A stretch of 64,000 bases of DNA, from positions 124,001-188,000 of the IMG/VR virus record IMGVR_UViG_3300026521_000471; one strand, given 5' to 3'. The position numbers were made by a program, and so were the translations under genes. Below the pieces are notes generated by a model. The model was given only the letters and a program-made list of their open reading frames with translations. It searched no databases and had not been told where the DNA came from. Of this stretch, positions 671 to 35,660 are shown piece by piece (the stretch's first letter is position 1; every line of letters begins with the position of its first letter).

Positions 671-1192
671 ATGAAATTAAAAGACTTAATCAATGAAGAA
701 AAAGAAACTAAAGGGACTTATGCAGGTGTATTACTTAGTCAAGACGATGAAGATAAAATCATCTCAATAGTGAAAGAAATGGGAATACCTAATCCTATTC
801 CTCGAAAAGATATTCATATTACACTTTTGTATAGTAGAAAGGTACTACCAGATTATAAACCAAATGAAAATTTAGATATTTGGGCATATCCGACTGAATT
901 TCATATTTTTAATGGTGGTAATGGTAAAGATATTCTTGTATTAAAGATTGACTCTCCTGATTTAGTTAAAAGACATAAAGAGTTGATGAAAGAACATGAA
1001 GCTACTTATGATTTCCCAGAATATATCCCACATATCACATTAAGTTATGATTTAGAAGATTATTTAAATACAGAAGATGATAGACTTAAAGCCATTAATG
1101 AAAAATTTAAAAGTTTATTACCTAAAGAGTTTCATTTAGTTAGAGAATACGTAGAAGATTTAAATTTAGATTGGGAGAATAGTAATGACTGA
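671..1192 (+). CDS. acb1: anti-CBASS 2H phosphodiesterase Acb1 (T4 57B-like)
   Basis: Two HxT motifs (HITLLYSR, PHITLSY); PNPIPR, ATYDFPEY and C-terminal REYVEDLNLDW are colinear with T4 57B. Confidence 0.85.
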   Translation: MKLKDLINEEKETKGTYAGVLLSQDDEDKIISIVKEMGIPNPIPRKDIHITLLYSRKVLPDYKPNENLDIWAYPTEFHIFNGGNGKDILVLKIDSPDLVKRHKELMKEHEATYDFPEYIPHITLSYDLEDYLNTEDDRLKAINEKFKSLLPKEFHLVREYVEDLNLDWENSND

Positions 1193-2132
1193 AAATCTGT
1201 TAAATTATATTAAAGAGTTATCACTTAATGATAAAAAAACTTTAATTCAAAAAGTCACTAAGCTATTTGAAGAAGGTGGTGAACTTTCTAAAGTAGTTTT
1301 ACCATTTGAAGGAGCTTATGCTACAAATCATAGAGTAGTAAACAAACAAAAGATTCTTGAAGAATGTGCTGATGTTTTTCTAGTAAACCAAAGTATAATG
1401 TATAGTGCCGGGTTTACTGATGAAGAATTCAATGATATGGTTTTAAAGAAAGCTCAAGTATGGAATGGATTACAAGTTAAAGAAGATAGAGCATTAGCAA
1501 AAAGTGATTTGATGCCTTATGAAATTCATATTACAGTTAATGCTGAAAATGGCATTGATATAGAACAATATAAAAAAGATTGTAAATTTATCGGTGTTAA
1601 ACCTATTGTACTTGATTTACAAGATAAATCCGGTGAACCTGTTATGGATGATGTAATGACTTCATCTAAAATTGTTGGTAATAATGGTGAAGCATTTGAA
1701 GAAATGAAAAGAATTTCTAATCATCTAACTTCACTAGGTTATAATGTAATTAGAGAAAAGATTGAAGCCAGTTATTGGCATACTAAAGCACCTTTTAAAA
1801 TTGATGGCGATACAAAAATGCCAGAGGGATGCTATTTTGAATGCCACCTAAACGTTTCTTGTACAGATGAAAAATTACCTCTACTATCAACTATAGCAAA
1901 AAATACAAATTGTCATCTTTCAAAAAATAAATTTAAAGTATTTGATGATGGAAGCTTTACAATTATGATGACTTATCGAAGCTATGACCAAATGTTTGAA
2001 GATTTTGAAGATAGTTTAAAATGGATTAAAAAATGTTTAATTACAGATAATTTTGAATTAGAAAAAGAAGTAGTGGAATTTAGTATCTATGATACAAAAA
2101 TTACTCATGACTCAAAATGGTTGGAAGCGTAA
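1185..2132 (+). CDS. MazG-like NTP pyrophosphohydrolase fused to an internally duplicated ExH domain
   Basis: KLFEEGGEL and LEECADV MazG motifs; C-terminal repeats YEIHITV..REKIE and FECHLNV..KEVVE. Confidence 0.6.
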   Translation: MTENLLNYIKELSLNDKKTLIQKVTKLFEEGGELSKVVLPFEGAYATNHRVVNKQKILEECADVFLVNQSIMYSAGFTDEEFNDMVLKKAQVWNGLQVKEDRALAKSDLMPYEIHITVNAENGIDIEQYKKDCKFIGVKPIVLDLQDKSGEPVMDDVMTSSKIVGNNGEAFEEMKRISNHLTSLGYNVIREKIEASYWHTKAPFKIDGDTKMPEGCYFECHLNVSCTDEKLPLLSTIAKNTNCHLSKNKFKVFDDGSFTIMMTYRSYDQMFEDFEDSLKWIKKCLITDNFELEKEVVEFSIYDTKITHDSKWLEA

Positions 2133-2475
2133 ATTGAATACTAATCTTCTTGAGAAAAAAGCTGATGAATTAATAGACAATGCAGGAATTGTTTGTTTAT
2201 GCGGTAGTACAAAATTTAAAAAAGAATTTGAAATAGCTACTTCAATATTATCCAAAAAAGGCTTTATTGTATTAAGTGTTGCACAATTTTCCCATCATGA
2301 TAATTTACCTTTAACCGAATTTGAAAAAATAACTTTTAATAAGTTACATTTTAAAAAAATAGAATTAGCAGATTTAGTTTATATTGTCAATCCAAATAAT
2401 TATATTGGTGAATCTACAAAGGATGAAATTGAATATGCTAAATCTCTAAATAAAAAAATACAATATATGTTTTGA
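2089..2475 (+). CDS. nucleoside 2-deoxyribosyltransferase-like protein
   Basis: VCLCGS..F, HFKKIELAD, YIGEST..EIEYA pattern; start codon uncertain. Confidence 0.55.
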   Translation: MIQKLLMTQNGWKRKLNTNLLEKKADELIDNAGIVCLCGSTKFKKEFEIATSILSKKGFIVLSVAQFSHHDNLPLTEFEKITFNKLHFKKIELADLVYIVNPNNYIGESTKDEIEYAKSLNKKIQYMF

Positions 2476-2506
2476 ATTTGTATAATATAATAAAAAAAGG
2501 AAGAAT

Positions 2507-2665
2507 ATGGATCATAAAATTCGAGAATTATTAGAAAAAATCCAACATTTTACAAATAAAGCCGTAGGTTTACTACAAGAAGAAAAATATGATGAAGCCG
2601 CTTTTTTCTTTAATCTAAGTTCTAGTTTAAATTCTGAAATCGCATTACTAATAAAGAGAGATTAA
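2507..2665 (+). CDS. small hypothetical protein (52 aa, not in ORF track)
   Basis: AAGGAAG RBS and upstream TATAAT; MDHKIRELLEK...LLIKRD*. Confidence 0.65.
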   Translation: MDHKIRELLEKIQHFTNKAVGLLQEEKYDEAAFFFNLSSSLNSEIALLIKRD

Positions 2666-2667
2666 TA

Positions 2668-3999
2668 GTGATTACATTAGAATATGTTGCTAGTGCTTGG
2701 ATGAATTTTAATTTCCTAAATTCAAAAGACCCGGAATTATTAAAATGGGCATCTGAAAATTATACTGCAAATTTAAAATATATGATGAGTAAATTAGAAA
2801 ATAATATTTTTGAATTTTCCGGACTTTATAATGCTTTTTATGAACCCGAACAATATGAGCGTATTTTAGAATGTGGAATAAGTGATCCGAGTTGCGGACA
2901 TAAACATGTTTATGCTGATAGTGGTGGTCTTCAGATGATGAAGCAAAATCTAAATATTACTGAAGAGATTAAAAAAAATATAATGCAAAATCAAGCAAAA
3001 TACTCAGATTTTGCATTTATTTTTGATGAAATACCATCTTATAATGTTGATGATACACGAGTATTTGTGAATGAATGGGTAAAACCTTACGGTGAAAGAA
3101 CAGGACAAAATTTAAATACATTATTAAAAGTTATAAAAGATAATAATTCTCATACAAAAGCAATACCTATTGTTCAAGGTAGAGGAAGAGAGCAAATAAC
3201 TGAATTTACAAACGCAATGTTATCTCAAATATCAAAGAACGATTTAAAATATATTGAAGCTTTTGCTATGGGTAATGCCCATGGAAATGGTTTTGGTTTA
3301 TTGCAATCTACTAGTACTTTTTTATCTATGAAAAATATCGATAATAAATTTAAAAAACACATTCACTTACTTGGAGTAACAGGTTTTGATAGGATGATTC
3401 CAATTCTTCAATTAGTAAAAAATGGTTTATTTGAGCATACCGAAAAGATTTCATTTGATAGCAGTTATCATGCTAAAACCTATGCTTTTGGCAATCTTCA
3501 AAAAAGCGTTGAATGGTGTATTAATGGTATGCAAGATGATAAATTAGGTTTAAAAAGAAATAAAATGACAGAAGACTTTTTTAAAGAATTAGATGATTTT
3601 TGGAAAAATTCTCCCACGTATAATATTGATGAATTTGATGACTATTTTAAATATTCATCATGGGATAAAGATAAAATCAACACACCAAATAGACAATTAG
3701 CTGAGCGAGACGTAGAAGCATATAAAAAAAATGTAAATATTATTCAAAATTATATTTTCTTAAATATGTACAAATATTTTGAAGTTTTAAATAAATTTAT
3801 GACTGATGAACTTACTATGGAGCAGATTCTCCATAGTAAAAAAACTCTAAAGATATTCCAACCATTACAAAATGTATATTCACTTGATGAATTATATGAT
3901 TGGGAAAATTATGCCGCATCAAATTATAAAGTTCAAGTTAGTAGCTCTATCGATAAAGCACCTTTTGACATTGATAAAGTAACTGATGTTTTATTTTAA
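2668..3999 (+). CDS. TGT/DpdA-like guanine transglycosylase, paralogue 1
   Basis: YADSGGLQ, FDEIP, PIVQG, HLLG and SFDSS occur in TGT order; no zinc-binding CxCxxC seen. Confidence 0.75.
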   Translation: MITLEYVASAWMNFNFLNSKDPELLKWASENYTANLKYMMSKLENNIFEFSGLYNAFYEPEQYERILECGISDPSCGHKHVYADSGGLQMMKQNLNITEEIKKNIMQNQAKYSDFAFIFDEIPSYNVDDTRVFVNEWVKPYGERTGQNLNTLLKVIKDNNSHTKAIPIVQGRGREQITEFTNAMLSQISKNDLKYIEAFAMGNAHGNGFGLLQSTSTFLSMKNIDNKFKKHIHLLGVTGFDRMIPILQLVKNGLFEHTEKISFDSSYHAKTYAFGNLQKSVEWCINGMQDDKLGLKRNKMTEDFFKELDDFWKNSPTYNIDEFDDYFKYSSWDKDKINTPNRQLAERDVEAYKKNVNIIQNYIFLNMYKYFEVLNKFMTDELTMEQILHSKKTLKIFQPLQNVYSLDELYDWENYAASNYKVQVSSSIDKAPFDIDKVTDVLF

Positions 4000-4011
4000 T
4001 AGGAAACATTT

Positions 4012-5335: not shown

Positions 5336-5343
5336 TATAAATA
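5336..5343 (+). promoter_or_regulatory. T4-type late promoter TATAAATA (representative site)
   Basis: The same octamer lies 15-40 nt before starts at 18247, 20575, 24295, 27822, 31078, 39485, 54368, 63638 (+) and 48311, 60517 (-); AATAAATA variants at 10063, 23508, 33329 (+) and 35684, 58051 (-). Confidence 0.7.
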
Positions 5344-5372: not shown

Positions 5373-6434
5373 ATGAAATTAATAGATGTTATTATGGATA
5401 ACTCATTAGAAATTGATGAAGGTTTTATCTTAGAACTAGAGGAATTGGATTTACTTGAAAATATAGTAAATGAATTAGAATTATTAGAAGCTAGAAATAT
5501 AGCAACTACAAGCAATGAAAATATAGTGTATGTTAAATCACTTAAAGCATTGCGTGAAAAAGCAAGAAAAATCATTAAAGATGCTATGAAAAAAAATCCA
5601 AAAACTAGAGCTGAATTAATAGCAAAAGTAAGATACTTAACAGGTAGAGGTAAAAAAGAACAACGTATTAAAGATGCTGCAAAAGGAATATATAAAGGTG
5701 GTAAACCAGTTGAAGATAGCGTATATAATATTACTAAAGCGGATTTAGAAATCATAAAGAAAAATGAAGCAGAAGGTAAATCTAAACCTAAAACATTATC
5801 TCCTAACCAAATTACTTATAAAGCTAGCCAGACACCAGGTGACTATAAAACATTAACTTTAACTAATCTTTTTGCTATAAAAATTAAAGATAAAGTTTAT
5901 ACAGTTAAATCGGCAGAAGATAAAATAGAAAAATATGCAACTGATGCAGCAAAAGTTGTAGTTGAAGCTAGAAATAAAACTGCAAAAATTTGTAAAGAGT
6001 TTGGGTTAAAAGAACCTTTCATTCCAAAATCAGAGGAAGAAGCTAAAAAATATATCATTGATGTATTGATTAAACCTATGTCTAAAGCTGCAAGAAATGC
6101 TAAAGAAAAAGCTAAAGAAATGTTAAATCGAAAAATGGCTGGTGAATCATTACCAAAAAATGACTATGTAATTAAAATTGATTCTTATAGACATGGTAAA
6201 GTTACAGTTCTTGTTCAACTACATCTTGATAAAGTTGTTGAATCATTAGGTTTAGAAGGTATAAAAGCAAGTGAAGTTCCAGATTCATGGTCAGGCACTA
6301 AAGCTGCATGGGGGAAACAAGTAAAACAGTACAAGGCAGAAATTCAAGATAAGATTGAGTCAATAGCTGGACCAAATGCTACAGTTTCAATCGGTAATGC
6401 TGGTGGTTGGATTACTATTAGATTTACTAAATAA
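5373..6434 (+). CDS. late hypothetical protein, possible internal virion protein with acidic propeptide
   Basis: Late promoter; acidic L/E-rich first 40 aa ending in LLE, then a Lys/Ala-rich basic body. Confidence 0.5.
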   Translation: MKLIDVIMDNSLEIDEGFILELEELDLLENIVNELELLEARNIATTSNENIVYVKSLKALREKARKIIKDAMKKNPKTRAELIAKVRYLTGRGKKEQRIKDAAKGIYKGGKPVEDSVYNITKADLEIIKKNEAEGKSKPKTLSPNQITYKASQTPGDYKTLTLTNLFAIKIKDKVYTVKSAEDKIEKYATDAAKVVVEARNKTAKICKEFGLKEPFIPKSEEEAKKYIIDVLIKPMSKAARNAKEKAKEMLNRKMAGESLPKNDYVIKIDSYRHGKVTVLVQLHLDKVVESLGLEGIKASEVPDSWSGTKAAWGKQVKQYKAEIQDKIESIAGPNATVSIGNAGGWITIRFTK

Positions 6435-14535: not shown

Positions 14536-15321
14536 ATGAATATTACTCAACCCGAACCTAATTTAAATACACCTCCAAAGAAAAGAAGAGGACGTTTAAA
14601 AAAAGGGGAAAAAGTTACTGCTAGTGGTTATAAAACTATGACTATGGAAGAAGCTTATAAATCTGTTGAAGGTATGAAATATAAAATAGCAAATAAATAT
14701 AAAGTTTTTTGTAACGCAAGTGTTTCATATGAAGATTTAATTGGAGCAGCAAATATAGGGCTTGCATGGGCATATAGAGATTGGGATGCAAATACTGCTA
14801 AATTTACTACTTTCTCACACAATAGAATTGAAAGACAAATTGACCTATACTTATGTGAAATGCTACCAAAATATAAAAACAATGTAGATGCTAAAAATTG
14901 GCTAAGAAGAAAAAATGATGAAAGCTTTAAACAACTTCAAGAAAGAAAAGTAACTAAAGACCCAGAATTTAATGAATTGCATGGTTTAGATGGTAAAAAA
15001 GAATTCACCAAAGAATTATATAATTTATATACTCAAAAAATGGCTAATAAACTATATAACAATGGACAACATCTAATTGTTACTTCGGCAAGTGGTTTTC
15101 AAAATGGCGATAATGAAGATTTCAATATTTTTGATGCTCTTAATGATGATAATGACAATGTTGATATAGAAGAGGAATTTGATATTAATGAATTAGAAGA
15201 TGTAACGCAAAAAGAAATAGCTTCTATGATTCTTGAAGGGTATTCTATTCAAGAAATTGCTAAAAAATTTGGCGTTTCAAAAGCTAAATTAATAAATTTA
15301 GCGGGTGTAAAGGAATTTTAA
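14536..15321 (+). CDS. sigma70-family-like transcription factor
   Basis: Region-2-like YEDLIGAANIGLAWAYRDWD..AKFTTFSHNRI; C-terminal HTH GYSIQEIAKKFGVSK. Confidence 0.7.
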   Translation: MNITQPEPNLNTPPKKRRGRLKKGEKVTASGYKTMTMEEAYKSVEGMKYKIANKYKVFCNASVSYEDLIGAANIGLAWAYRDWDANTAKFTTFSHNRIERQIDLYLCEMLPKYKNNVDAKNWLRRKNDESFKQLQERKVTKDPEFNELHGLDGKKEFTKELYNLYTQKMANKLYNNGQHLIVTSASGFQNGDNEDFNIFDALNDDNDNVDIEEEFDINELEDVTQKEIASMILEGYSIQEIAKKFGVSKAKLINLAGVKEF

Positions 15322-17925: not shown

Positions 17926-18228
17926 TTATTCTTTTGAAAAAATTCGTTCTGCAAATTGAGTAACAGGTCCTCTAAGAACTTTTTGTAATTCTATACCAAA
18001 TAGATTTACTTCTTCATGTTCTTCTTTTGTAGCATTTAAAAGGGTGGTTAAACCATTAGTATATCTTGTAATATACTGATTATCAATCTGTCTATTTGAA
18101 CCTAATACAATAACTTTACAAGAAGAATCAATACGACTTAATACTAGTTGTAATGTAGAATTACTCATATTTTGAGCTTCATCAATAATTACAATAGCAT
18201 CTGAAAGTGTTCGACCTCTCATACTACC
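17926..18228 (-). pseudogene. orphaned duplicate of the phoH 3' end
   Basis: (GS)MRGRTLSDAIVIIDEAQN...IFSKE closely matches the last ~100 aa of 19010-20437; similarity stops at the Gly codon near 18228. Confidence 0.85.
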
Positions 18229-18279
18229 AAAACTTTTTAATAATTGTATAAATAATATAAAAGGATTAAGGACAAATTC

Positions 18280-19017
18280 ATGATATATACCATATATAAA
18301 ATCACAAATAAACTAAATAATAAAATATATATAGGAGCCCACACAACAGAGGACATTTCCGACAATTATATGGGTTCGGGAGCAATATTAAAAAAAGCTA
18401 TTGAAAAATATGGGTTAGATAATTTTTATAAAGAGGTGTTATATACGTTTACAACCGAAGAAGAAATGTATTTAAAAGAAGCAGAGTTAGTTAATGAAGA
18501 ATTTATTCAACGAGATGATACTTATAATTTAAAGGTCGGTGGATATGGAGGATGGTCTTATATTAACGAAAATAAATTAAATAATACAGAAAAAAATAGA
18601 TTATCAAGATTAAAAAATTTGGAAAAAGCAAATGAAGCAAATAAAAAATTAGTTGCTGAAGGGAAGCATAGAAAAGGCTTTAAGATTAGTGCGGAAACAA
18701 AATTGAAAATGTCGTTAAATAAGAATCGGTCATTTCCTGGCGAAAAAAACCCTCAATATGGGAAAAAATGCGTTAATAAAAATGGTAAAAATTTGATGAT
18801 ATTAAAAGAGGAAGTAAATGACTATATTAAAAAAGGTTGGGAGTTAGGTCAAATACAAAATAAACCAGATACCAAAGGAAATAAAAATGCGTCCTTTGGT
18901 AAAAGCTGGTACACAAATGGTGAAGAAAGTAAATTATTAAGCCAAGAAGAGTCAATTAAATACATTTCTTTAGGTTGGACAAAGGGTAGAACATTGAAAA
19001 AAAGTAAGACTAGCTAG
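18280..19017 (+). mobile_element. free-standing GIY-YIG (Seg-like) homing endonuclease
   Basis: TIYKITN..KIYIGAH, YMGSG, YNLKVGG; NUMOD-like C-terminal repeats; own TATAAATA promoter at 18247. Confidence 0.85.
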
Positions 19018-19024
19018 TCTTACT
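19003..19024. repeat. perfect 22-bp palindrome carrying the stop codons of both convergent genes
   Basis: AGTAAGACTAGCTAGTCTTACT; both proteins end S-K-T-S-stop. Confidence 0.9.
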
Positions 19025-20437
19025 AAAAATTTTTTCCGCAAATGTTGTTATAGGTCCTCTTAATACTTTCTGTAATTCTATACCGAATAAACTTACTTCT
19101 TCATGTTCTTCTTTTGTAGCATTTAAAAGTGCAGTCAAACCATTCGTATATTTGGTAATATATTGATTATCGATTTGTCTATTTGAACCCAATACAACAA
19201 CTTTACAAGAAGAATCAACCCTAGTCAATGTTAGTTGTAGTGTACTAGTACTCATATTTTGAGCTTCATCAATAATTACAATAGCATTAGATAAAGTTCT
19301 TCCGCGAAGTGCACCAGTCCACATAGTTTCAACTTGATAACGTTCTACTAACTCTTGGACTTTTTCAGATATTCGTTCTTCAGTTACAGTTTCTCCCTTA
19401 CCAGGCTTATTTTCTTTTGATTTTTTTAACATTTGACCCGCAATATAAGCAAGAGTATCAAATAATGGGAAATTATATATCTCAAATTTTGCTTCATTCG
19501 TTGAAAGATAACCTACATCTTCTCCTTTAGCTAACGATTCAACTGAGTTTCTAATATAGACTATACGTTGATATTCTTTACACTTAATCAATTCCATTGC
19601 TGCACTAATAGCTAAAAGGGTTTTACCAGAACCAGCTTTAGCTTCAGCTACAACGATATTATAATGATTATTAAGTAATGCATTACTAAAAAATAATTGT
19701 TCGGCATTCATAGGATTTACATTTTGTTTACGTAATTCTTTTTCATCTAAAAATTGTATTTTATTATTAATTATATAAGCAAGTATTTTTTGCCCGTCTT
19801 TATTAAAAATATAATTAAAATTATTTGGTTTGTGTTCGGAGTTAAAATCTAAAATATTATCTCCCTCTCGAACTTCCTGTCCATTTAAATTAATTTCTTT
19901 AATAAAATCTAAAGAAATCTCTTTATTTCCTAAATTTAATGGTTCTGTCTCCAGTCCTAAACTTATAGCTCTTGTTCTAGCCATCACATCTAATGATATA
20001 AATTTAATATGTTCATAATTTATATCCTCTGTATTATGTATTAAATCCAATGTAATTTCTAAGATCTTTCTATCATTTCTTATACTATTACTCGTATTAT
20101 CAGAATCAGCTTTATATACTTCCTTGGATATAATATGAATAACAGTATCATCTACTTTAGTTTCGATTAAAACTATATCAAATGATTTATTGTTGTCGCT
20201 ATTTGCTTTTATAACTCTTTTATCTTTAATTTCCGCATCAAATAACATTCTACCGAACTCTCTGGCTTGGAAATTTATTTCATCCCAACCACTTTTTTTA
20301 CTATCTATTTCATCTAATACTGTTTCTGGTAAAATAATAAGATTTTTACCATTATCCGATAAAGTGAATAGATTTTTTGCGTCGTCAAGTATTATATTTG
20401 TATCTAAACAAAATACTTTTTCAAATTTTTTAGTCAT
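19010..20437 (-). CDS. phoH: PIN-PhoH ATPase
   Basis: N-terminal PIN (LDTNIILD, VLDEID, NDRKIL); AKAGSGKT; RGRTL; IIDEAQN. Confidence 0.9.
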   Translation of the reverse strand: MTKKFEKVFCLDTNIILDDAKNLFTLSDNGKNLIILPETVLDEIDSKKSGWDEINFQAREFGRMLFDAEIKDKRVIKANSDNNKSFDIVLIETKVDDTVIHIISKEVYKADSDNTSNSIRNDRKILEITLDLIHNTEDINYEHIKFISLDVMARTRAISLGLETEPLNLGNKEISLDFIKEINLNGQEVREGDNILDFNSEHKPNNFNYIFNKDGQKILAYIINNKIQFLDEKELRKQNVNPMNAEQLFFSNALLNNHYNIVVAEAKAGSGKTLLAISAAMELIKCKEYQRIVYIRNSVESLAKGEDVGYLSTNEAKFEIYNFPLFDTLAYIAGQMLKKSKENKPGKGETVTEERISEKVQELVERYQVETMWTGALRGRTLSNAIVIIDEAQNMSTSTLQLTLTRVDSSCKVVVLGSNRQIDNQYITKYTNGLTALLNATKEEHEEVSLFGIELQKVLRGPITTFAEKIFSKTS

Positions 20438-20604
20438 AAATAAAGTCTCCTTTTTGACATTTAAACGGATAGGAATAATTCCAATCTCATTTTTATTTAT
20501 GAAATATTTCCCCCACTTACACCTTTTTCAAATATTTAACTATTAACAAACAATAAAAATTACTACGTACACCATATAAATAAAAAGAAAATAAGGCATT
20601 AAAA

Positions 20605-21048
20605 ATGAAAATAAGAAATATTCTATTAGAAGCTAAAAAAAGAAGATGGAAAGGTCTAAATAATCATATCGTAGAAATTTTACCAAATAAAACGGGTTTC
20701 GGAACTGGTTCTGGTAAGTTTAGAATTAATAAAAAAGATGATAATGAAATTTGGACAATAAAAGTTGGACCAAATAGTACAAAATATTATATATATCTTG
20801 GTATAAGTCCTAATGCTAAAAAAATTGGATTTCGTATCCAGCCAAATAAAATAAATAGTGGAGTTGATGGTCATAAATTATTTAACAAAATTAAAAAATT
20901 AACAGATACTTTCAATAATCAAATAATTTATCCAAAAAATAATAATACTGTAAATGAAGATTTTATTGATGAATTAATTAAATTAAATACTAATTTGTTT
21001 AATGAAATCAATAAAGCTGTGATAGATTTAAAAGAAAACTTTAAATAA
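20605..21048 (+). CDS. late basic hypothetical protein (MKIRNILLE leader)
   Basis: TATAAATA at 20575. Confidence 0.6.
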   Translation: MKIRNILLEAKKRRWKGLNNHIVEILPNKTGFGTGSGKFRINKKDDNEIWTIKVGPNSTKYYIYLGISPNAKKIGFRIQPNKINSGVDGHKLFNKIKKLTDTFNNQIIYPKNNNTVNEDFIDELIKLNTNLFNEINKAVIDLKENFK

Positions 21049-24285: not shown

Positions 24286-24329
24286 TATATCACATATAAA
24301 TAAAAGTGTAAAAAAAATAAGGAGTTACT

Positions 24330-24539
24330 ATGAAATTAGGTGAACTATTAAACAAAAATACAATAAATGAAAATTCAAATATTACTGAAGATGTTTTAAG
24401 ACAAGCAATGGCAGAATCAGGTAAAACTCGAGCGAATGACCTAAAAGCATACTTAAAATATAAATTTCCAGATATGCCTTTTACTGCTAAAGAACTAACA
24501 GCTATTGTAAAAGAGTTTAGAACAACTCTAGATTATTAA
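24330..24539 (+). CDS. small late protein (MKLGELL leader)
   Basis: TATAAATA at 24295 and AAGGAG RBS. Confidence 0.65.
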   Translation: MKLGELLNKNTINENSNITEDVLRQAMAESGKTRANDLKAYLKYKFPDMPFTAKELTAIVKEFRTTLDY

Positions 24540-25141: not shown

Positions 25142-26551
25142 ATAGATGATACAGAATATGAAGACGCTTTAGCCGAATTAGAGGCAGAATCATCTTCAAA
25201 AAAGAAAAAGAAGAAAAAAACAGTTGAACATTCAGAAGGCAAACTATTAGATATTGAAGATAAAGAACGAATTTTACTTGCTCAACTTATTAATAACCCA
25301 GAATTATTTGTTAAAGGTATAACTTTTCTAGATAAAGATTTCTTTGAATCAAAAATTAATAAATTAATTGTGGAATTTATGATTGATTATTATGATTTAT
25401 ATAAAAGTATCCCGCCTGAAGATGCTATACTATTAGAATTAAATTTAGATAACGTACATGATGATTGGTTAGATATAAATAAACCTTGGCCAACAGAGTA
25501 TCTTGAAGACTATTTAAATGCGTTTATAAAAAATATGAGTATGAAAGGTGCTATCGAAGATAGTATTGAATTACTAGAAGAAGAAGATTATGGAACTATT
25601 GAGAAGAAGATTAAAGATGCTGTAAACGTTGATATTGATACAAAGTTAGGTGTAACCATAGATACTGATAAAGATAATTTTCGTGACTTATTTAAAATGC
25701 TAACATCAACTGAAGCTACAATTCCAACTGGATGGTGGAACGTAGATGATAAATTAGATGGTGGTGTAACAATACCAAGTTTAAATTATTTATTAGCTAA
25801 ATCTGGTGGTGGTAAATCAATAGGTTTAATAAATTTAGCATGGAATTATATTCAGATGAAAAGGGATGTTATTTATATTTCTCTAGAACTAAAGGAAGAG
25901 AAAATCATGAAGAGGTATATAACCCACTCAACTAAAATTCCGACCCATCAAATTGAAAAGTCTGAGATGGAAATTTATAACCATCTAAAGAAATGTGATA
26001 ATAAGGGGTATGGTCGATTTACTGTTCATTTCTATCAACCCAATACACTAAGTGCAATGAAGTTGGAATTATTTGTAAGAAATTATTTACAAAAATATAA
26101 TACAGTACCTATTATTATTCTAGATTATGCAGGTTTAATGACACCAAATGGTAAAAATTGGCAAGGTATGTTTGAAAAAGATAAATATGTTTCTGAAGAA
26201 TTAAGAGCTGTGGCAACGTTATTTGATACGATCGTTTGGACAGCAGACCAATATAATAGATGTATATCATTTGGTGAACAGGTAATAACACCGAATGGTA
26301 AAAAAAATATTGAAGATGTTGAAATAGGGGATAAAGTTCTTGGGGGCAATAATAGTTATCGTACTGTAACAGCGATAACGGAGCCGGAAGAACAAGAAGT
26401 ATATAAAATTACTTTAAAAAGTGGAAAAACTATCAAAGTATCAGGAAGACATATCTTCCCAAAAGTTTTAGAAGATGGGAAATTAGTAGAAGATTGCATA
26501 TTATCTTCATTAAGTATAGGTGACAAGTTGGTGGTCTCCGATAAAATATGA
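25130..26551 (+). CDS. T4 gp41/DnaB-like replicative helicase, N-terminal part, ending in split-intein IntN
   Basis: AKSGGGKS Walker A, YISLEL, IILDYAGLM, WTADQYNR, then CISFGEQV intein block A. Confidence 0.9.
   Translation: MDEQIDDTEYEDALAELEAESSSKKKKKKKTVEHSEGKLLDIEDKERILLAQLINNPELFVKGITFLDKDFFESKINKLIVEFMIDYYDLYKSIPPEDAILLELNLDNVHDDWLDINKPWPTEYLEDYLNAFIKNMSMKGAIEDSIELLEEEDYGTIEKKIKDAVNVDIDTKLGVTIDTDKDNFRDLFKMLTSTEATIPTGWWNVDDKLDGGVTIPSLNYLLAKSGGGKSIGLINLAWNYIQMKRDVIYISLELKEEKIMKRYITHSTKIPTHQIEKSEMEIYNHLKKCDNKGYGRFTVHFYQPNTLSAMKLELFVRNYLQKYNTVPIIILDYAGLMTPNGKNWQGMFEKDKYVSEELRAVATLFDTIVWTADQYNRCISFGEQVITPNGKKNIEDVEIGDKVLGGNNSYRTVTAITEPEEQEVYKITLKSGKTIKVSGRHIFPKVLEDGKLVEDCILSSLSIGDKLVVSDKI
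26261..26548 (+). mobile_element. split intein N-fragment (96 aa)
   Basis: Cys1 block A; IEDVEIGDKV; block B VSGRHIF; ends LSIGDKLVV with no block F or G. Confidence 0.88.
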
Positions 26552-31341: not shown

Positions 31342-32457
31342 TTGGCTTTACCAAAAAAGAAAAAAATTTTTTCTATCCCACTTAACCCGTACACTTCAAA
31401 AGAAGACTTTGAAAACATCTTTGTTCCATTCTTAAAAAAGAATGCCGATTGGATTTATGATGTATATTTTACAAGTAGAATCCCACCATTTATGCAAGAT
31501 GCAATGGGAGCAAATTTTGATAATAATTCATTAGTACAAATTTTTAATAATGCTATGGCATTAGAACAAGCTACAGGAGTTAGAGTTTCAGCAACTTTCA
31601 ATAATGTTAATGTTCCACCTACTGCAGAGAATTTAGAAATATTTTGTTCAAATCTACAATTTTTATATGATGCAGGACTCAGAAGCATGACACAACCACA
31701 CAATCATTGGATGATGACCGGTGTATTTAAAGAAAAATTTCCCGAATTACAAGTAAAGAATACAGTTTTAAAAAGAGTTGCTACAGCACAAGACTTTTGG
31801 ACTGCATGTGAAGCAGGTTATGATTATATTAATATTGATAGAATTCTTTTGCGTGATGAAGAAATGCTAAAGAGAATTAAAAAAGCCCAACTTAAATTTG
31901 AAAAAGAAACTGGAAAATATGTACCTATCGCATTACTTGCTAATGAAGGGTGTAGAGGTAAATGTCCGGTAATGAATGAACATTATACAATTAATAATGC
32001 TAGTGGTAGCAAACAACCAGGAACAGACAAACCATATTTTTATCAAAAAATTAGTGAAGTTAGTTGCCCTAAATGGAGATTAGAAGATCCTGCTTATTCA
32101 TTCAAAATAGGCAACATACCACCATATCGAGAAGATTTTGAAAGACTTTTAGAGTATGTAGATGTAATAAAAACTCATGGTAGAGAAGGGTTTGGACTAC
32201 TAAATGATACTATCAAATTCATTGAGAGTTATATTAATGGTGATGAAGAATTACATGACATTTCAATTAGAGGTCAAATTGAAGATTTAAAAGTCGACCA
32301 AAATAAATTGCAATTATGGCGAAAACATATTAGAACGTGTCAATTTGAATGTTGGGATTGTCATCTTTGTGATGAACTAGTAGCATCAGCTCAAAAAAAG
32401 AAGGATAAAGATTTAGGTACATCAATAGATGATTTAATAAATTCATATGAAGGATAA
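31342..32457 (+). CDS. peptidase U32-family (Fe-S hydroxylase-like) protein
   Basis: LLANEGCRGKCP..EH, SC, DVIKTHGR, C-terminal CxxxCxxCxxC. Confidence 0.65.
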   Translation: MALPKKKKIFSIPLNPYTSKEDFENIFVPFLKKNADWIYDVYFTSRIPPFMQDAMGANFDNNSLVQIFNNAMALEQATGVRVSATFNNVNVPPTAENLEIFCSNLQFLYDAGLRSMTQPHNHWMMTGVFKEKFPELQVKNTVLKRVATAQDFWTACEAGYDYINIDRILLRDEEMLKRIKKAQLKFEKETGKYVPIALLANEGCRGKCPVMNEHYTINNASGSKQPGTDKPYFYQKISEVSCPKWRLEDPAYSFKIGNIPPYREDFERLLEYVDVIKTHGREGFGLLNDTIKFIESYINGDEELHDISIRGQIEDLKVDQNKLQLWRKHIRTCQFECWDCHLCDELVASAQKKKDKDLGTSIDDLINSYEG

Positions 32458-32719
32458 CATTATGATTAAGATAATTTCAAAATATGATGATAATTCATCA
32501 TTAGATTTTTTAGCGACTAAATGTAATTATGAAGTTGTTATAAGTACTATTGATGATACAACACAATCCACTATATGTGATGGTAAAGATGCAGGACTAA
32601 AAGCATTAGAAGTAATTGATCAATATAAATTGCTTTCTGATAGTAATCCTCCTTTCCCATTCATAGAATCGACAATAGTAAAATATCTTGCTCCATTAAT
32701 TAATAAGATAGGTTTATAA
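32447..32719 (+). CDS. hypothetical protein
   Basis: Coupled ORF. Confidence 0.55.
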   Translation: MKDNIMIKIISKYDDNSSLDFLATKCNYEVVISTIDDTTQSTICDGKDAGLKALEVIDQYKLLSDSNPPFPFIESTIVKYLAPLINKIGL

Positions 32720-32721
32720 TT

Positions 32722-33333
32722 ATGAGTGTTTTACTTGGAAGTAAGATTATAGAAGAAGTATCTAATGGGAAAATTATCATTGAACCATTCAATAAATCTT
32801 TTGTAGGACCAAATTCTATTGATATAACATTAGCTAATAAACTAATTACATATGAACATTGTGAAATTAGAAAAATTGATGGGGAATATACTGTTGTACC
32901 CGCAAAAATATTTGGTTATCAAGAGCCTATTATTGATATGGCTAAAGAAAATACAACGTATGAATTAAAAATTCCGGAAGAAGGATTAGTACTTTCTCCA
33001 AATATTCTATATTTAGGAAGTACAAATGAAAAGGCAGGAAGTGATTATTATGTCCCAATGTATGAAGGTCGTAGCTCAATGGCTCGATTAGGAATACAAT
33101 CTCATGTTTCTGCAGGATTTGGGGATATTTTTTTTAAAAGTAATTGGACCTTAGAAATAACAGTAGTACATAAAACAAAGATATACCCAAATTGTCGAAT
33201 TGGACAAGTATATTTTCATGAAGTAAATGAATTAGAAAGAAGAGATTTAATTAAAATGAAAAAATACTACCAAGGAAAATATTCAGACCAGATAGGTCCT
33301 CAAAAATCTAAATCATATTTAGATTTTCAATAA
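32722..33333 (+). CDS. dcd: dCTP deaminase
   Basis: PNSIDITL, EGRSSMARLG, AGFGD, WTLEI, IGQVYF, KYSDQ. Confidence 0.88.
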   Translation: MSVLLGSKIIEEVSNGKIIIEPFNKSFVGPNSIDITLANKLITYEHCEIRKIDGEYTVVPAKIFGYQEPIIDMAKENTTYELKIPEEGLVLSPNILYLGSTNEKAGSDYYVPMYEGRSSMARLGIQSHVSAGFGDIFFKSNWTLEITVVHKTKIYPNCRIGQVYFHEVNELERRDLIKMKKYYQGKYSDQIGPQKSKSYLDFQ

Positions 33334-33357
33334 ATAAAATAAAAAAGGAGATTTACT

Positions 33358-34272
33358 ATGGCAGTAATTCAAAATATATTCAAAAATCTTGAATACAAAT
33401 TAAATATGACCGAAGAAATAAAACTTTTCAAATGGTCAAATAAAAATATTAAAGAAAAATTAGCGGAATTAATGGATTGGAATGAACAATATTCACCAGA
33501 AGCAGTTATTGTTAAAGCAGCTGAGCAAATTTTAGAATTAAATTATCCTAATGATTATTTAAAGTATTCTGCTATGCAGCAAAAATTTAAACACTCACAT
33601 CCATTTTATATTGAAAATACCGTTGATGATGTATCGGGATTTATTGATTGGGTGAATAGTGTATTTGACCATTTTGATGGGCTTCAAGAAGGTTTATTAG
33701 GTGGATTAGTAGTAACTCCAGCTATTGAGGGGTCTATGATTTCATGCGAATATGAAAAAGGGAAACTTGTAAGAGTACTTAACAAGGGTGATGGAGATGA
33801 CGCAGAGATGATTATTAATATGATGGATTTATCATCAATCCCACAAGAAATTTCAGTTAAGAAAAATATAGCTGTTAGAGGAATAGTCACCCTTAAAGAT
33901 CCAAATAAAAAGAATAAAGGACAAACTGTTACATCGGCTGTTAATTCAATAATGTTTGCAGATAATGCTGATGATAGTAATCTAGTATTCATACCTAATG
34001 AATGGCTTGCTGCTGACGGTAAATGGCAGAATACTTCAAAAACATATCAAATACTTAAAGATAATGGATTTATTGTTCCAGCAGTACATAAGGCTGCACA
34101 AGTTATTGAGGCTCTTGAAAAATATGAAGAATACATTGCAACAGATTTTGGTTATGAATTAATGGGTTGTAGAATTGAAGTAGAAAAATCAGATACAATT
34201 AATGAGCTTATTGACATTATGAAAGAAGAAAATCTTTCAGATTATCAACATAAAATAATTTTGATGGGATAA
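33358..34272 (+). CDS. degenerate NAD-dependent DNA ligase adenylation-domain homologue
   Basis: VTPAIEG..ISCEYEKGKLVRVLNKGDG..E, IPQEI, AVRGIV; motif I Lys absent; no OB, HhH or BRCT domain. Confidence 0.6.
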   Translation: MAVIQNIFKNLEYKLNMTEEIKLFKWSNKNIKEKLAELMDWNEQYSPEAVIVKAAEQILELNYPNDYLKYSAMQQKFKHSHPFYIENTVDDVSGFIDWVNSVFDHFDGLQEGLLGGLVVTPAIEGSMISCEYEKGKLVRVLNKGDGDDAEMIINMMDLSSIPQEISVKKNIAVRGIVTLKDPNKKNKGQTVTSAVNSIMFADNADDSNLVFIPNEWLAADGKWQNTSKTYQILKDNGFIVPAVHKAAQVIEALEKYEEYIATDFGYELMGCRIEVEKSDTINELIDIMKEENLSDYQHKIILMG

Positions 34273-34291
34273 AGGTTTTATACCTTTATCC
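34269..34291. terminator. hairpin between convergent genes
   Basis: GATAAAGG-N7-CCTTTATC. Confidence 0.55.
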
Positions 34292-34567
34292 ATTATATCT
34301 GAATGGTTCACTATCAATCGTTATTGTCCCTTCAGATGAATCTGTATCTCCTGCAAATAATGAATCCTCTTTATTTTCACCATCTTGAATGAATGTCCAT
34401 ATTAATGTATTACCTTTAGTTTTAAATTTCAAATTTTTAATTTCGATACCTAATTCTTCAGCATACTCAATTAAACTATCTTTTATATCAGCCTTAACCG
34501 CTTCCAATCCCTTATAATCATTTTTAACTTCTACACTATTACTCTCTAGTAAATCCTTTAATTTCAT
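34286..34567 (-). CDS. small protein (MKLKDLLE leader)
   Basis: AGGAG RBS; coupled in a minus-strand operon. Confidence 0.65.
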   Translation of the reverse strand: MKLKDLLESNSVEVKNDYKGLEAVKADIKDSLIEYAEELGIEIKNLKFKTKGNTLIWTFIQDGENKEDSLFAGDTDSSEGTITIDSEPFRYNG

Positions 34568-34854
34568 TTGTTCTTCTCCTTATTTAATTTTTTATTTTTA
34601 CCCCATTTTTTAAAAGTTTTAGCTAGGGTCGCTCTTTTTTTTAATAATACCGCTTCATCATGATCTTTCTTTGAAGCTTTAGGATTATTTATAATTTTAT
34701 CAGCTTTTTCAATAGCTGTTTTAATACAATCATAAGATGTTTTTCTAAATCCCATATCTTCACATTGTTGAGTAAAAGCTCCAACTGTTCCTTTTTTCTT
34801 CATAGATTTAGCTACATCTTGAGCCCACCATTCATTTAATTGTTTTAATTTCAC
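34564..34854 (-). CDS. small basic protein (MKLKQLNE leader)
   Basis: GGAG RBS, GTG start. Confidence 0.65.
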   Translation of the reverse strand: MKLKQLNEWWAQDVAKSMKKKGTVGAFTQQCEDMGFRKTSYDCIKTAIEKADKIINNPKASKKDHDEAVLLKKRATLAKTFKKWGKNKKLNKEKNK

Positions 34855-34863
34855 TTTGTACTC

Positions 34864-35418
34864 CTAAAATATAAATATTTCTTTAATTTCTGGCATTAAC
34901 TCAGCAATATCACTACTAACAATCTCAGTCAAATTCTTATCTACATAATTAATAAACTCGTTAATAAGTATTTTTGACTCCTTAATCATTTTATTTACTT
35001 GTTCTTCTTCAGGTTTATCCTCTATACCTTCAAATAAATAAAGGGCTGAAGTATCCAATTTATTATATATGGCATTCATAATTTGGTTATTTGTTTTTGA
35101 ACCTATTTTAGAACCAAACATTAATGAACCTTTCAAATATCGTTCTCCAGGCGATCTAAAAGCAGACCCCATCCTAGTAACTGATATACCAAATTTAAAA
35201 TATATTTGTAATGGATTCTTATCTGGAAATGCTGAAAACTCATAAATTATATCTAATGTATCATTCCAACCTGTTCTAAGTTCTATTGCTTCGATACTAA
35301 TACCATAATCTTTAAAAGAATTATCTATTTGAACTAAAAATTCATCTTTTGATTTTTTTAAATAAAAATATTGTATATCCTTACTGGGAAACATACCCAA
35401 ATTATTGATAAATTCCAT
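34864..35418 (-). CDS. hypothetical protein
   Basis: Coupled ORF. Confidence 0.6.
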   Translation of the reverse strand: MEFINNLGMFPSKDIQYFYLKKSKDEFLVQIDNSFKDYGISIEAIELRTGWNDTLDIIYEFSAFPDKNPLQIYFKFGISVTRMGSAFRSPGERYLKGSLMFGSKIGSKTNNQIMNAIYNKLDTSALYLFEGIEDKPEEEQVNKMIKESKILINEFINYVDKNLTEIVSSDIAELMPEIKEIFIF

Positions 35419-35660
35419 TATATTTCCTGGATTATTATAGTATTCATACCTAAATAAGAGATACTATATTTTCTCATTAGAGATGGTATAGAATTCATAT
35501 CATCAACTATATTTTTAACTCTTTTCGATGGTAATGATACATCAATTTCGTACCCATTTGACTTTTTAAAGTATTTAACTTTTAAATTATTATTTTTAAA
35601 ATATTCTTCAATATCACTTATTTTAGATTCATTTATCTTCAATATATTCTTTAATAGCAT
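35418..35660 (-). CDS. small protein (MLLKNILKINE leader)
   Basis: AATAAATA at 35684-35691 on the minus strand. Confidence 0.55.
   Translation of the reverse strand: MLLKNILKINESKISDIEEYFKNNNLKVKYFKKSNGYEIDVSLPSKRVKNIVDDMNSIPSLMRKYSISYLGMNTIIIQEI

What the first reader, a model, noticed from the sequence alone, without database searches (positions are those of the whole stretch)
671..35660. Shared N-terminal leader MKLxxL(L/I)xE on unrelated proteins, including Acb1: candidate capsid-targeting signal
Seen: MKLKDLINEE (671, Acb1), MKLIDVIMDNSLE (5373), MKIRNILLE (20605), MKLGELLNKNTINE (24330), MKLKDLLE (34567-), MKLKQLNE (34854-) and MLLKNILKINE (35660-). All but Acb1 lie behind, or in an operon behind, a TATAAATA or AATAAATA late-type promoter, and the protein bodies are unrelated. 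Known: T4 internal proteins carry a ~10-aa MK-initial capsid targeting sequence removed by the prohead protease after (I/L)xE. Inference: these are packaged, co-injected proteins. Acb1 may therefore be delivered with the DNA, and the small unknowns are good anti-defence candidates.
Basis: inference. Interest (0 to 1): 0.72.

Follow-up and report, generated by a model that had tools for sequence, protein, structure and literature searches.

The report
Shared N-terminal tag on unrelated phage proteins
An uncultured AT-rich giant phage puts the same short N-terminal peptide (about MKLKDLLE) on many unrelated proteins, including the anti-CBASS nuclease Acb1; it looks like the phage T4 signal that loads proteins into the capsid for injection, but the head and protease genes needed to test this are missing from the contig.

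Summary
All seven N-termini are at the stated coordinates, each at the first possible start of its ORF. The protein bodies are unrelated. Genome-wide (224 kb contig, 348 genes), the pattern MK[LI]x[DENQ][LIV][LIMN] occurs 10 times against 0.7 expected, and 4 of the 10 lie outside the window.

The capsid-targeting (CTS) reading is plausible but unproven.
- **For:** the tag has the same pattern as the T4 CTS (hydrophobic-x-acidic-hydrophobic-hydrophobic-x-Glu). In T4 that pattern picks out IPII, IPIII, Alt and one unknown protein. The nearest large contigs with a tagged Acb1 carry a T4-type prohead protease.
- **Against:** this contig has no protease, capsid, terminase or sheath gene. Phages without that protease also show 1-2 such N-termini. 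Exact MKLKDLLE starts occur in complete 50-64 kb phages that lack it.

About 100 of 120 Acb1 homologues carry it, ahead of a variable linker and outside the catalytic domain. A second, unrelated enzyme family carries an optional tag of the same kind. A related enzyme (PDE-9) uses its N-terminus as an active-site lid, which is a rival reading for Acb1 alone.

Verdict: a real recurrent tag, most likely a CTS-type propeptide (about 0.45).

The parts
671..1192 (+). Acb1 (2H phosphodiesterase, anti-CBASS). Residues 1-9, MKLKDLINE, are the tag; residues 10-13 are a linker; the Pfam domain runs from residue 14.
   Evidence: PF23474 scores 1e-33 over residues 14-170. PDB 7t26 aligns from residue 15. 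phrog_755 aligns from residue 10. The AlphaFold2 model gives residues 1-11 pLDDT below 50 and the rest about 90 or more. No [TA]ATAAATA lies upstream.
5336..5343 (+). TATAAATA promoter-like motif, 37 nt upstream of the start codon at 5373
   Evidence: positional peak shown.
5373..6434 (+). 353-aa carrier starting MKLIDVIMDNSLE-IDE. It has an acidic N-terminal region of about 40 residues with several hydrophobic-x-Glu sites, followed by a basic body (pI 9.6).
   Evidence: No Pfam, PHROG, NCBIfam or Atlas hit. The only relatives found are the near-identical sister contig and one weak 50-residue match.
20575..20582 (+). TATAAATA promoter-like motif upstream of 20605
20605..21048 (+). 147-aa carrier starting MKIRNILLE; basic body (pI 9.9); an ORFan
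   Evidence: Among 5.8 billion proteins only the sister-contig homologue was found.
24295..24302 (+). TATAAATA promoter-like motif upstream of 24330
24330..24539 (+). 69-aa carrier starting MKLGELLNKNTINE
   Evidence: no family hit.
35684..35691 (-). AATAAATA promoter-like motif ahead of the four-gene minus-strand run from 35660 to 34286
35418..35660 (-). 80-aa carrier starting MLLKNILKINE; first gene of the run
   Evidence: weak phrog_1377 hit only.
34864..35418 (-). 184-aa gene inside the same run that has no tag (MEFINNLGMF...). Operon membership alone does not confer the tag.
34564..34854 (-). 96-aa carrier starting (GTG) MKLKQLNE; very basic body (pI 10.0)
34286..34567 (-). 93-aa carrier starting MKLKDLLE; acidic body (pI 4.4). 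Its start overlaps the preceding stop by 4 nt.
37395..38003 (+). 202-aa weak candidate starting MKLETLISTVKD, with no closing Glu and no promoter motif. Listed for completeness only.

Best explanation
The seven N-termini belong to a genome-wide set of at least 10-20 proteins. Each begins with an 8-14-residue amphipathic peptide, consensus M-K-L-K-D-L-L-E, or more generally M-K-hydrophobic-x-(D/E/N)-hydrophobic-hydrophobic-(x)-E.

I think this is most likely a capsid-targeting propeptide of the kind known from phage T4 internal proteins. In that model the helix docks the protein onto the scaffolding core while the prohead assembles. A T4-type prohead protease then removes it after the hydrophobic-x-Glu site. 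The mature protein stays in the head and enters the next cell with the DNA.

**Shown here**
- The tag exists and is enriched.
- It is modular: it sits on unrelated bodies and is joined to the Acb1 domain by a linker of variable length.
- It is not part of the Acb1 catalytic fold.
- It matches the T4 CTS pattern.

**Inferred only**
- That this phage has a T4-type head and protease on the unassembled part of its genome.
- That the tag binds the core, is cleaved, and leads to packaging and injection.

For Acb1, the tag was inherited with the gene family rather than added in this phage.
For: 1. Enrichment: 10 observed against 0.69 expected, with four hits outside the window. A T4-derived general pattern gives 7 observed against 1.0 (column shuffles) or 1.8 (internal frequency of the same motif).
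2. T4 calibration: the same general pattern in T4's 253 genes hits IPII, IPIII and Alt, which are known CTS proteins, plus gp61.1. The literature describes T-even internal proteins as diverse defence proteins that share only a conserved CTS (PMC3012670), and gp21 as cutting after I/LxE (PMC12991175).
3. Modularity in Acb1: in 116 of 120 homologues the region before the domain is 8 or more residues long. Its composition is M (114), K/R (93), L (78), x, E/D (88), L/I (89), hydrophobic, then Glu at position 8 (59 sequences) or 9 (30). A linker of 2-12 residues follows before the domain. The Pfam domain and the solved structure both start after the tag. AlphaFold2 with a 68-sequence alignment leaves residues 1-11 as an undocked helix with pLDDT about 40.
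4. A second unrelated family: the 715-aa carrier (MQLKDLLCE) belongs to a family of about 500-aa proteins whose domain begins MLDISIKN. By eye, roughly a third of the 150 representatives carry an optional add-on before that point, such as MKSFKTFITEAKGD-, MKLRDLLESR- or MNFKELLESKDQ-; the generic pattern itself flags 10 of them.
5. Company: contigs with a tagged Acb1 at 41-47% identity (G001, 363.5 kb and complete; G002; G004) carry Peptidase_S77. G001 shows the same enrichment, 8 observed against 0.8-2.3 expected. In isolated phages Acb1 occurs almost only in Straboviridae.
6. [TA]ATAAATA peaks 20-39 nt upstream of start codons here, just as in T4. It is associated with the tag.
7. Synonymous codons differ between copies of the tag, so selection acts on the peptide rather than on a recently copied piece of DNA.
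8. The exact peptide is rare in 2.9 million viral contigs (61 hits), yet it occurs twice in this one genome, with close variants besides.
Against: - No prohead protease (PF03420), gp23-type capsid protein, large terminase or tail sheath is on the contig. PHROG scans of about 57 proteins found no structural gene.
- The phage shares only 24 proteins with G001 and 12 with T4, so its head type is unknown.
- Phages without S77 also show 1-2 hits each (SPO1, A511, phiKZ, Staphylococcus phage K: 5 hits in 973 genes). S77-positive phages other than this one show 22 hits in 2109 genes, only a 2-4-fold difference.
- Of seven records judged at least 90% complete that carry an N-terminal MK[LF]KD[LF][LF]E gene, six (50-64 kb) lack S77.
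- T4 Acb1 has never been reported as a virion protein to my knowledge, and no paper I could search links Acb1 with packaging.
- IPII and IPIII in T4 lack an adjacent TATAAATA, so promoter adjacency is not diagnostic.
- The 'late' status of the motif is unproven in this phage.
Confidence: 0.45

Rival explanations
1. The tag is only a favoured N-terminal amphipathic helix. Lysine at position 2 and AT-rich codons suit translation initiation, and helix periodicity places hydrophobic and acidic residues in this order. On this view there is no shared destination, and the recurrence reflects composition plus helix grammar.
For: - Background hits occur in phages without a T4-type protease.
- Exact MKLKDLLE starts occur in unrelated small phages across 29-69% GC.
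- By my own rough composition estimate, 43 N-terminal exact matches across IMG/VR is about what chance would give.
- The core motif also occurs inside proteins, at 0.26% of positions.
Against: - The count in this genome is 5-14 times above both nulls, including the internal-frequency null that already contains helix grammar.
- The tag is conserved in Acb1 from 28% to 46% GC genomes, with a variable linker.
- It is optional within the ligase-like family.
- AlphaFold2 does not dock it on the body.
Confidence: 0.2
2. For Acb1 only, the N-terminal extension is an enzymatic lid or accessory element of the 2H phosphodiesterase. This would match the related phage enzyme 2H PDE-9, whose N-terminal 15 residues close over the active site and are needed for efficient hydrolysis. 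Its likeness to the other N-termini would then be coincidental.
For: - bioRxiv 10.1101/2025.08.21.671373 reports the PDE-9 N-terminal lid and the effect of deleting residues 1-15.
- PDE-9 (9q2g) matches this Acb1 at E = 3e-8, with catalytic His at 50/123 against 49/121 here, so the N-terminal overhang is of similar length.
- The tag is conserved family-wide, as an enzyme element would be.
Against: - This clade keeps the C-terminal Trp lid of T4 and FBB1 Acb1 (W168 nearly invariant). PDE-9 is described as having its lid at the N-terminus instead.
- The tag consensus is acidic and has no aromatic or basic residue, which is poor chemistry for covering a phosphodiester ligand.
- The FBB1 chain solved with cGAMP starts at the residue aligned to G15 here. 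The paper's numbering (Y12, lid 145-152) implies that about 8 N-terminal residues are absent from it.
- This reading does not explain the same tag on 10-20 unrelated proteins, or on the ligase-like family.
- I could not obtain the PDE-9 N-terminal sequence to compare.
Confidence: 0.15
3. The promoter, 5' UTR, ribosome-binding site and first codons form a portable regulatory cassette. Recombination between such cassettes shuffles genes, as proposed for T-even internal-protein loci. The shared peptide would then be a passenger of the shared DNA.
For: Several carriers share a longer upstream string, [TA]ATAAATAAAAGAAAAAGG, followed by ATGAAA. Carriers cluster at window 34286-35660, and three adjacent tagged genes lie at G001 25146-26008.
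Against: - Synonymous codons and the spacers differ between copies.
- Half the strict carriers, including Acb1, have no such promoter.
- Many genes with the cassette lack the tag, for example the genes at genome 26842 and 72508.
- In Acb1, conservation across distant phages is at the amino-acid level.
Confidence: 0.1
4. The tag is a substrate or handle for the prohead protease, or for another partner, without packaging. It might give timed activation or inactivation late in infection, or compete with the host proteins that the protease cleaves.
For: - The tag ends in the I/LxE-type site.
- T4 gp21 is reported to trigger CBASS by cutting an LxE-containing loop of the cyclase (PMC12991175), so a link between Acb1 and the protease would make biological sense.
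Against: There is no direct evidence for this. It needs the same unseen protease as the CTS model, and unlike that model it has no experimental precedent.
Confidence: 0.1

Closest known systems
Capsid targeting sequence (CTS) of phage T4 internal proteins IPI, IPII, IPIII and Alt
   Same: - A short N-terminal peptide starting with Met-Lys, on proteins that are otherwise unrelated and often small and highly charged.
- The same residue pattern: hydrophobic-x-acidic-hydrophobic-hydrophobic-x-Glu, ending in the prohead-protease site.
- Carriers partly clustered in the genome.
- Association with a TATAAATA-type promoter.
- In T4 the generalised pattern recovers the known CTS proteins.
   Different: - The consensus is Leu/Ile-rich (MKLKDLLE) rather than MKT-aromatic (MKTYQEFIAE), and one residue shorter.
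- The carriers include enzymes with known non-virion roles (Acb1).
- No protease, scaffold or capsid gene is available for this phage.
- No virion data exist.
Acb1 / T4 gp57B family (Pfam PF23474)
   Same: The window protein is a full-length member. It has both His-x-Thr motifs and the C-terminal Trp lid.
   Different: It carries a 13-residue extension before the domain, as do most metagenomic relatives. T4 keeps only a degenerate form (MMEFKDFST), and that extension is absent from the solved FBB1 chain.
N-terminal lid of phage 2H PDE-9 (PDB 9Q2G/9Q2Y)
   Same: A related 2H phosphodiesterase with about 15 functional residues ahead of the core.
   Different: PDE-9 is described as having its lid at the N-terminus instead of the C-terminus, whereas this protein keeps the C-terminal lid. 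The tag here is acidic and recurs on unrelated proteins.
Propeptides of head and ejection proteins in phiKZ-like and SPN3US giant phages
   Same: Many packaged proteins are trimmed by a prohead protease after a Glu.
   Different: From my own knowledge, those propeptides are long and varied and the site is (S/A/G)-x-E. phiKZ shows no enrichment of the present tag (1 hit).

Membership tests
T4-type capsid targeting sequence / internal proteins | An N-terminal peptide of about 10-19 residues, starting Met-Lys and amphipathic, shared by otherwise unrelated proteins | tested here: met
   The pattern matches the T4 CTS.
T4-type capsid targeting sequence / internal proteins | The peptide ends in the prohead-protease site (L/I)-x-E | tested here: met
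   All seven window carriers have [LI]xE ending at residue 8-16. For 5373 the first site, SLE, has Ser at P3, and the next site, IDE, fits. Genome-wide, 10 of 20 carriers have Glu at position 8 or 9, against 11 of 328 other genes.
T4-type capsid targeting sequence / internal proteins | The phage encodes a T4-type prohead protease (Peptidase_S77) and a scaffolding core | tested here: inconclusive
   Neither is on the 224-kb contig. However, the contig also lacks every head, tail and packaging gene tested, and CheckV rates it 85% complete. The nearest large contigs with a tagged Acb1 do carry S77. A metagenome scan did not recover the missing part.
T4-type capsid targeting sequence / internal proteins | Expression at the time of prohead assembly (late promoter) | tested here: inconclusive
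   [TA]ATAAATA shows T4-like spacing upstream of 4 of the 7 genes, or of their operon. No gp55 homologue was found. The phage has two sigma-70-family proteins. No expression data exist.
T4-type capsid targeting sequence / internal proteins | The protein is present in the virion with the leader removed, and enters the host with the DNA | not testable with these tools
   The phage is uncultured and no proteome exists.
Acb1 (PF23474, 2H phosphodiesterase) | Pfam model above its gathering score, two catalytic H-x-T/S motifs, and a C-terminal aromatic lid | tested here: met
   116.5 bits against a cut-off of 27. H49/T51 and H121/T123 are invariant, and W168 is nearly invariant, in 68 homologues. 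PDB 7t26 matches at 5.5e-17. The model has mean pLDDT 88.
N-terminal-lid 2H phosphodiesterases (PDE-9 type) | The lid is supplied by the N-terminus in place of the C-terminal lid, with residues suited to covering the nucleotide | tested here: not met
   The C-terminal lid is retained. The tag is acidic with no aromatic or basic residue.

The most novel reading that the evidence does not exclude
In the T4 superfamily, a modular CTS-like propeptide may be attached to whole families of counter-defence enzymes: Acb1 almost universally, and a roughly 500-aa ligase/nucleotidyltransferase-like family optionally. If so, the anti-CBASS nuclease is either pre-loaded into capsids and injected, or is physically or temporally coupled to the prohead protease. 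That protease has just been reported to be the trigger CBASS senses. The small tagged ORFans in this phage would then be a reservoir of injected anti-defence proteins.
Probability: 0.25. Interest if true: 0.8.

Novelty: new member of a known kind. Interest (0 to 1): 0.5.

Why it matters
If the tag is a capsid-targeting signal, a simple sequence rule would list the injected proteins of uncultured T4-related giant phages. Those proteins are the first phage products a cell meets and are prime anti-defence candidates. It would also mean that Acb1, so far treated as an ordinary expressed enzyme, is delivered ready-made or is tied to the prohead protease. That would change how the timing of the CBASS / anti-CBASS contest is understood.

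Whatever its function, the family-wide N-terminal extension of Acb1 and the optional tag on a second enzyme family do not appear in the papers I could search.

Tried and rejected
- **Known relatives.** No near match to the window DNA exists in the INPHARED phage collection. The best rIIA matches there are at most 34% identical.
- **Head and packaging genes on the contig.** I searched for PF03420, PF07068, PF03237 and PF04984 and ran PHROG scans of about 57 proteins. None was found.
- **Recovering the missing part of the genome.** Three attempts all failed:
  - a metagenome scan with an S77 protease alignment found no contig from the sister sample, and the lowest-GC hit (L163, 31% GC, a 295-kb contig) could not be searched;
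  - an exact-match search with the contig's right end in viral contigs found nothing;
  - the sister contig (221.5 kb, about 96% amino-acid identity in the one orthologue aligned) is colinear, and by arithmetic on the record coordinates ends at about the same places, so it adds nothing.
- **Homologues of small carriers, to test tag conservation.** The 353-aa protein gave one weak local match. The 147-aa protein has only the sister copy. The Atlas returned nothing. These proteins are ORFans, so the test was uninformative.
- **Co-variation.** I asked whether a phage's Acb1 tag resembles the other tags of the same genome. Only four genomes were usable, and 2 of 24 permutations reached the observed score. 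This is suggestive only.
- **Annotation of pattern hits in KVP40, CP220 and P-SSM2.** All are annotated as hypothetical, so they give no calibration.
- **PDE-9 N-terminal sequence.** I could not obtain it from PDB alignments or from the preprint's supplements.
- **Complex prediction.** Not sent, because no scaffold or protease of this phage is available as a partner.
- **Clostridium phage c-st** was looked up as a possible AT-rich control but not fetched, because it was not needed.

Full report
**1. What the window is**

The window is bases 124,001-188,000 of a single 224,467-bp linear IMG/VR viral contig with 28% GC. CheckV rates the contig about 85% complete.

The genes I could name are replication, nucleotide-metabolism and accessory genes:
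- topoisomerase II, DnaB-like and UvsW-like helicases, PhoH, polynucleotide kinase, and MazG, Nudix and metallophosphoesterase proteins;
- a GIY-YIG homing endonuclease, rIIA and rIIB, an SSB, and two sigma-70-family proteins.

No major capsid protein, prohead protease, large terminase or tail sheath gene is present. No protein exceeds 896 residues. The structural part of the genome is therefore not on this contig.

There is no near relative among isolated phages. A sister contig from another sample (221.5 kb) is colinear. The one orthologue I aligned is about 96% identical in protein.

**2. The observation**

Each uses the first possible start codon of its ORF and follows a Shine-Dalgarno-like sequence. 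The gene at 34854 on the minus strand starts with GTG.

The promoter-like octamers lie at 5336-5343, 20575-20582, 24295-24302 and 35691-35684. The two remaining minus-strand carriers sit in the same tight gene run. Acb1 has no such motif upstream.

The carrier bodies share no detectable similarity. Apart from Acb1, they have no Pfam or PHROG assignment.

**3. Is it more than chance?**

I called genes on the whole contig (348 plausible genes).

| Test | Observed | Expected |
|---|---|---|
| ^MK[LI].[DENQ][LIV][LIMN] | 10 | 0.69 (column shuffles; 0 of 2000 reach 10) |
| Looser form | 20 | 4.6 |
| General pattern covering the T4 CTS | 7 | 1.0 (shuffles) or 1.8 (internal frequency) |

- Four of the ten strict hits lie outside the window, so they confirm a pattern that was derived from the window.
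- The general pattern is Met, one or two residues, then hydrophobic-x-[DENQ]-hydrophobic-hydrophobic-(x)-Glu. Its internal-frequency null already allows for helix periodicity.
- Half of the 20 loose carriers place Glu at position 8 or 9 behind Leu or Ile, against 11 of 328 other genes.
- Copies of the tag use different synonymous codons, so the conserved object is the peptide.
- Across 2.9 million viral contigs, the exact peptide M-K-[LF]-K-D-[LF]-[LF]-E is encoded only 61 times. In 43 of those it is the first start codon of its ORF. It occurs twice in this one genome, with close variants besides.

**4. The promoter motif**

[TA]ATAAATA is strongly positional. It lies 20-39 nt upstream of 47 of the 348 start codons. 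True T4 late promoters show the same distance distribution in T4 itself, and so does the related giant contig G001.

Tagged genes are 5-7 times more likely than others to have the motif (P = 0.002-0.005).

Whether the motif is 'late' in this phage cannot be shown:
- no structural gene is available to check;
- no gp55 homologue was found;
- the phage has its own sigma-70-family proteins;
- in T4, IPII and IPIII have no adjacent TATAAATA.

**5. Acb1: the tag belongs to the family, not to this phage**

The protein at 671-1192 is a clear Acb1.
- PF23474 scores 116 bits over residues 14-170.
- PDB 7t26 aligns from residue 15.
- Both His-x-Thr motifs and the C-terminal Trp are conserved.

Residues 1-13 lie outside the domain.

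Among its 120 best homologues from 5.8 billion proteins, 116 have 8 or more residues before the domain. The consensus is M, K/R, L, x, E/D, L/I, hydrophobic, E, E, K. Glu falls at position 8 in 59 sequences and at position 9 in 30. A hydrophilic linker of 2-12 residues follows before the conserved KGTYAGV strand.

AlphaFold2 with a 68-sequence alignment models the body at pLDDT of about 90 or more. It leaves residues 1-11 as an undocked helix at about 40.

Isolated phages show the same element in their own style:
- Citrobacter phage Ci1: MKTFAQLVEE, which is close to the T4 CTS MKTYQEFIAE;
- a KVP40-like phage: MKLSKFLES;
- T4 itself: a degenerate MMEFKDFST with no Glu. The T4 gene sits directly upstream of ipI, whose CTS starts MKTFKEFTST.

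**6. A second family with the same add-on**

The 715-aa carrier at genome 84984-87131 (MQLKDLLCE) belongs to a family of about 500-residue proteins. Their conserved domain starts MLDISIKN and soon reaches an E-K-x-D-G motif.

Among 150 representatives, many start exactly at MLDISI. By eye, roughly a third have an extra N-terminal piece such as MKSFKTFITEAKGD, MKLRDLLESR, MNFKELLESKDQ or MKSFSQYLKESKSE; the generic pattern itself flags 10 of them.

So the same kind of optional, linker-joined tag occurs on an unrelated enzyme family. That is how a portable signal behaves.

**7. Calibration and controls**

In T4 (253 genes) the general pattern hits four proteins. Three are known CTS proteins (IPII, IPIII, Alt). 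The fourth is gp61.1, a 54-residue hypothetical protein starting MKTFKEFIKE.

Contigs with a tagged Acb1 at 41-47% identity (G001, 363.5 kb and complete; G002; G004) carry a T4-type prohead protease.

Counts of the general pattern in other genomes:

| Genome | S77 protease | Observed | Shuffle expectation |
|---|---|---|---|
| This contig | unknown | 7 | 0.98 |
| G001 | yes | 8 | 0.78 |
| T4 | yes | 4 | 0.59 |
| CP220 | yes | 3 | 0.37 |
| KVP40 | yes | 3 | 0.71 |
| P-SSM2 | yes | 2 | 0.14 |
| G002 | yes | 2 | 0.22 |
| HTVC008M | yes | 0 | 0.13 |
| SPO1 | no | 1 | 0.28 |
| A511 | no | 1 | 0.29 |
| phiKZ | no | 1 | 0.26 |
| Staphylococcus phage K | no | 2 | 0.28 |

The contrast is in the right direction but modest: about 1.0% of genes in S77-positive phages against 0.5% in S77-negative ones, and 2.0% in this contig.

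Of seven records judged at least 90% complete that carry an exact MK[LF]KD[LF][LF]E start, only one has the protease. The peptide alone therefore does not prove a CTS. What is unusual here is its recurrence within one genome.

**8. Interpretation**

The best-supported model is a CTS-type propeptide. An amphipathic helix docks on the assembling prohead core and is removed after hydrophobic-x-Glu, and its cargo is carried into the next host. I put this at about 0.45.

The weak points are:
- the missing head module;
- the small number of genes shared with T4-type phages (24 with G001, 12 with T4);
- the background rate in other phages;
- the absence of any report of Acb1 in virions.

Rivals:
- **No shared fate.** The tag is simply a favoured N-terminal helix (0.2).
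- **Enzymatic lid, for Acb1 only.** The related enzyme 2H PDE-9 uses its N-terminal 15 residues this way. Three things count against it here. The C-terminal lid is retained. The tag is acidic. The FBB1 Acb1 chain solved with ligand appears to lack its first 8 or so residues, judging from the alignment and the paper's numbering (0.15).
- **Portable cassette.** A promoter-to-tag DNA cassette is spread by recombination (0.1).
- **Protease handle without packaging.** The protease cuts the tag but the protein is not loaded into the head (0.1). This is of interest because T4 gp21 has been reported to trigger CBASS by cutting an LxE-type loop.

**9. Novelty**

A conserved CTS on diverse internal proteins is textbook for T-even phages. 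If the model holds, this is a new member of that kind, in a distant uncultured giant phage and with a different consensus.

I did not find two things in the searchable literature: the near-universal CTS-like extension of the Acb1 family, and the optional tag on the ligase-like family. Both are worth a direct experiment.

Noticed in passing
Phage T4 NC_000866 18966-19130 (-), gene 61.1 (locus L296): This 54-residue hypothetical protein starts MKTFKEFIKE, a near-perfect copy of the T4 capsid targeting sequence. It is the only hit of the general pattern in T4 that is not a known packaged protein.
   Followed up: partly
Phage T4 NC_000866 73591-74410 (locus L047 13591-14410): T4 acb1 (57B) lies immediately upstream of ipI. 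The two N-termini resemble each other: MMEFKDFST against MKTFKEFTST.
   Followed up: partly
Genome 84984-87131 (locus L005 12984-15131): This 715-aa protein has a 197-residue N-terminal extension fused to a widespread domain of about 500 aa (phrog_27149). The domain starts MLDISIKN, includes an E-K-x-D-G motif, and has a weak nucleotidyltransferase-like stretch near residues 560-647. Its function is unknown. It may be a ligase- or adenylyltransferase-type enzyme.
   Followed up: partly
Window 17926-20437: A complete PhoH-like gene (19010-20437, minus strand) abuts a GIY-YIG homing endonuclease gene (18280-19017, plus strand). A 98-aa ORF (17926-18222, minus strand) follows and contains a Walker-B-like IIDEAQN string. 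It may be a leftover duplicate from a homing event.
   Followed up: no
Window 14536-15321 (+) and genome 213675-214535 (locus L009 9208-10068): Two sigma-70-family proteins with regions 2 and 4 (TIGR02937). They are unusual company for a T4-type TATAAATA motif and could be the factors that read it.
   Followed up: partly
Genome about 67.7-83.8 kb (loci L004 and L005): ARAGORN finds about 22 tRNA genes, most of them in a dense array.
   Followed up: partly
Sister contig locus L022 1-8687, equivalent to genome about 114.6-123.4 kb: Accessory genes just upstream of the window include NAPRTase, a GGDEF-domain protein, an RlaP nucleotidyltransferase, NADAR and a Cpn60/GroEL-type chaperonin (precomputed Pfam hits).
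   Followed up: no
Window 57291-57458 (+): A 55-aa ORF starts MKYGFSLFELIIVVVILGILAA. By eye this resembles a type IV prepilin N-terminal methylation motif.
   Followed up: no
G001 310656-311222 (loci L043/L025 region): In the complete 363.5-kb T4-type contig, two small genes shortly downstream of the portal-protease-scaffold-capsid cluster start MGINLTFKEYLE and MTKFSTFREFLLTE. These are tag-like N-termini close to the head genes.
   Followed up: no
Loci L238, L240, L253 and L273 (68-69% GC viral contigs): A 432-aa protein starts MKLKDLLEKRGRLVAEMRDL. By eye this resembles the N-terminal scaffolding (delta) domain of HK97-type capsid proteins. It is a reminder that the same octapeptide can arise in a different head-assembly context.
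   Followed up: no
Contig ends: genome 1 and 224467, against sister contig Ga0256837_1000002: Two independent assemblies are colinear. By my arithmetic on the record coordinates, Acb1 lies about 124.6 and 99.8 kb from the ends here, and about 122.4 and 98.6 kb from the ends in the sister contig. Both assemblies lack all structural genes. A repeat or a hypervariable junction probably breaks both at the same points.
   Followed up: partly
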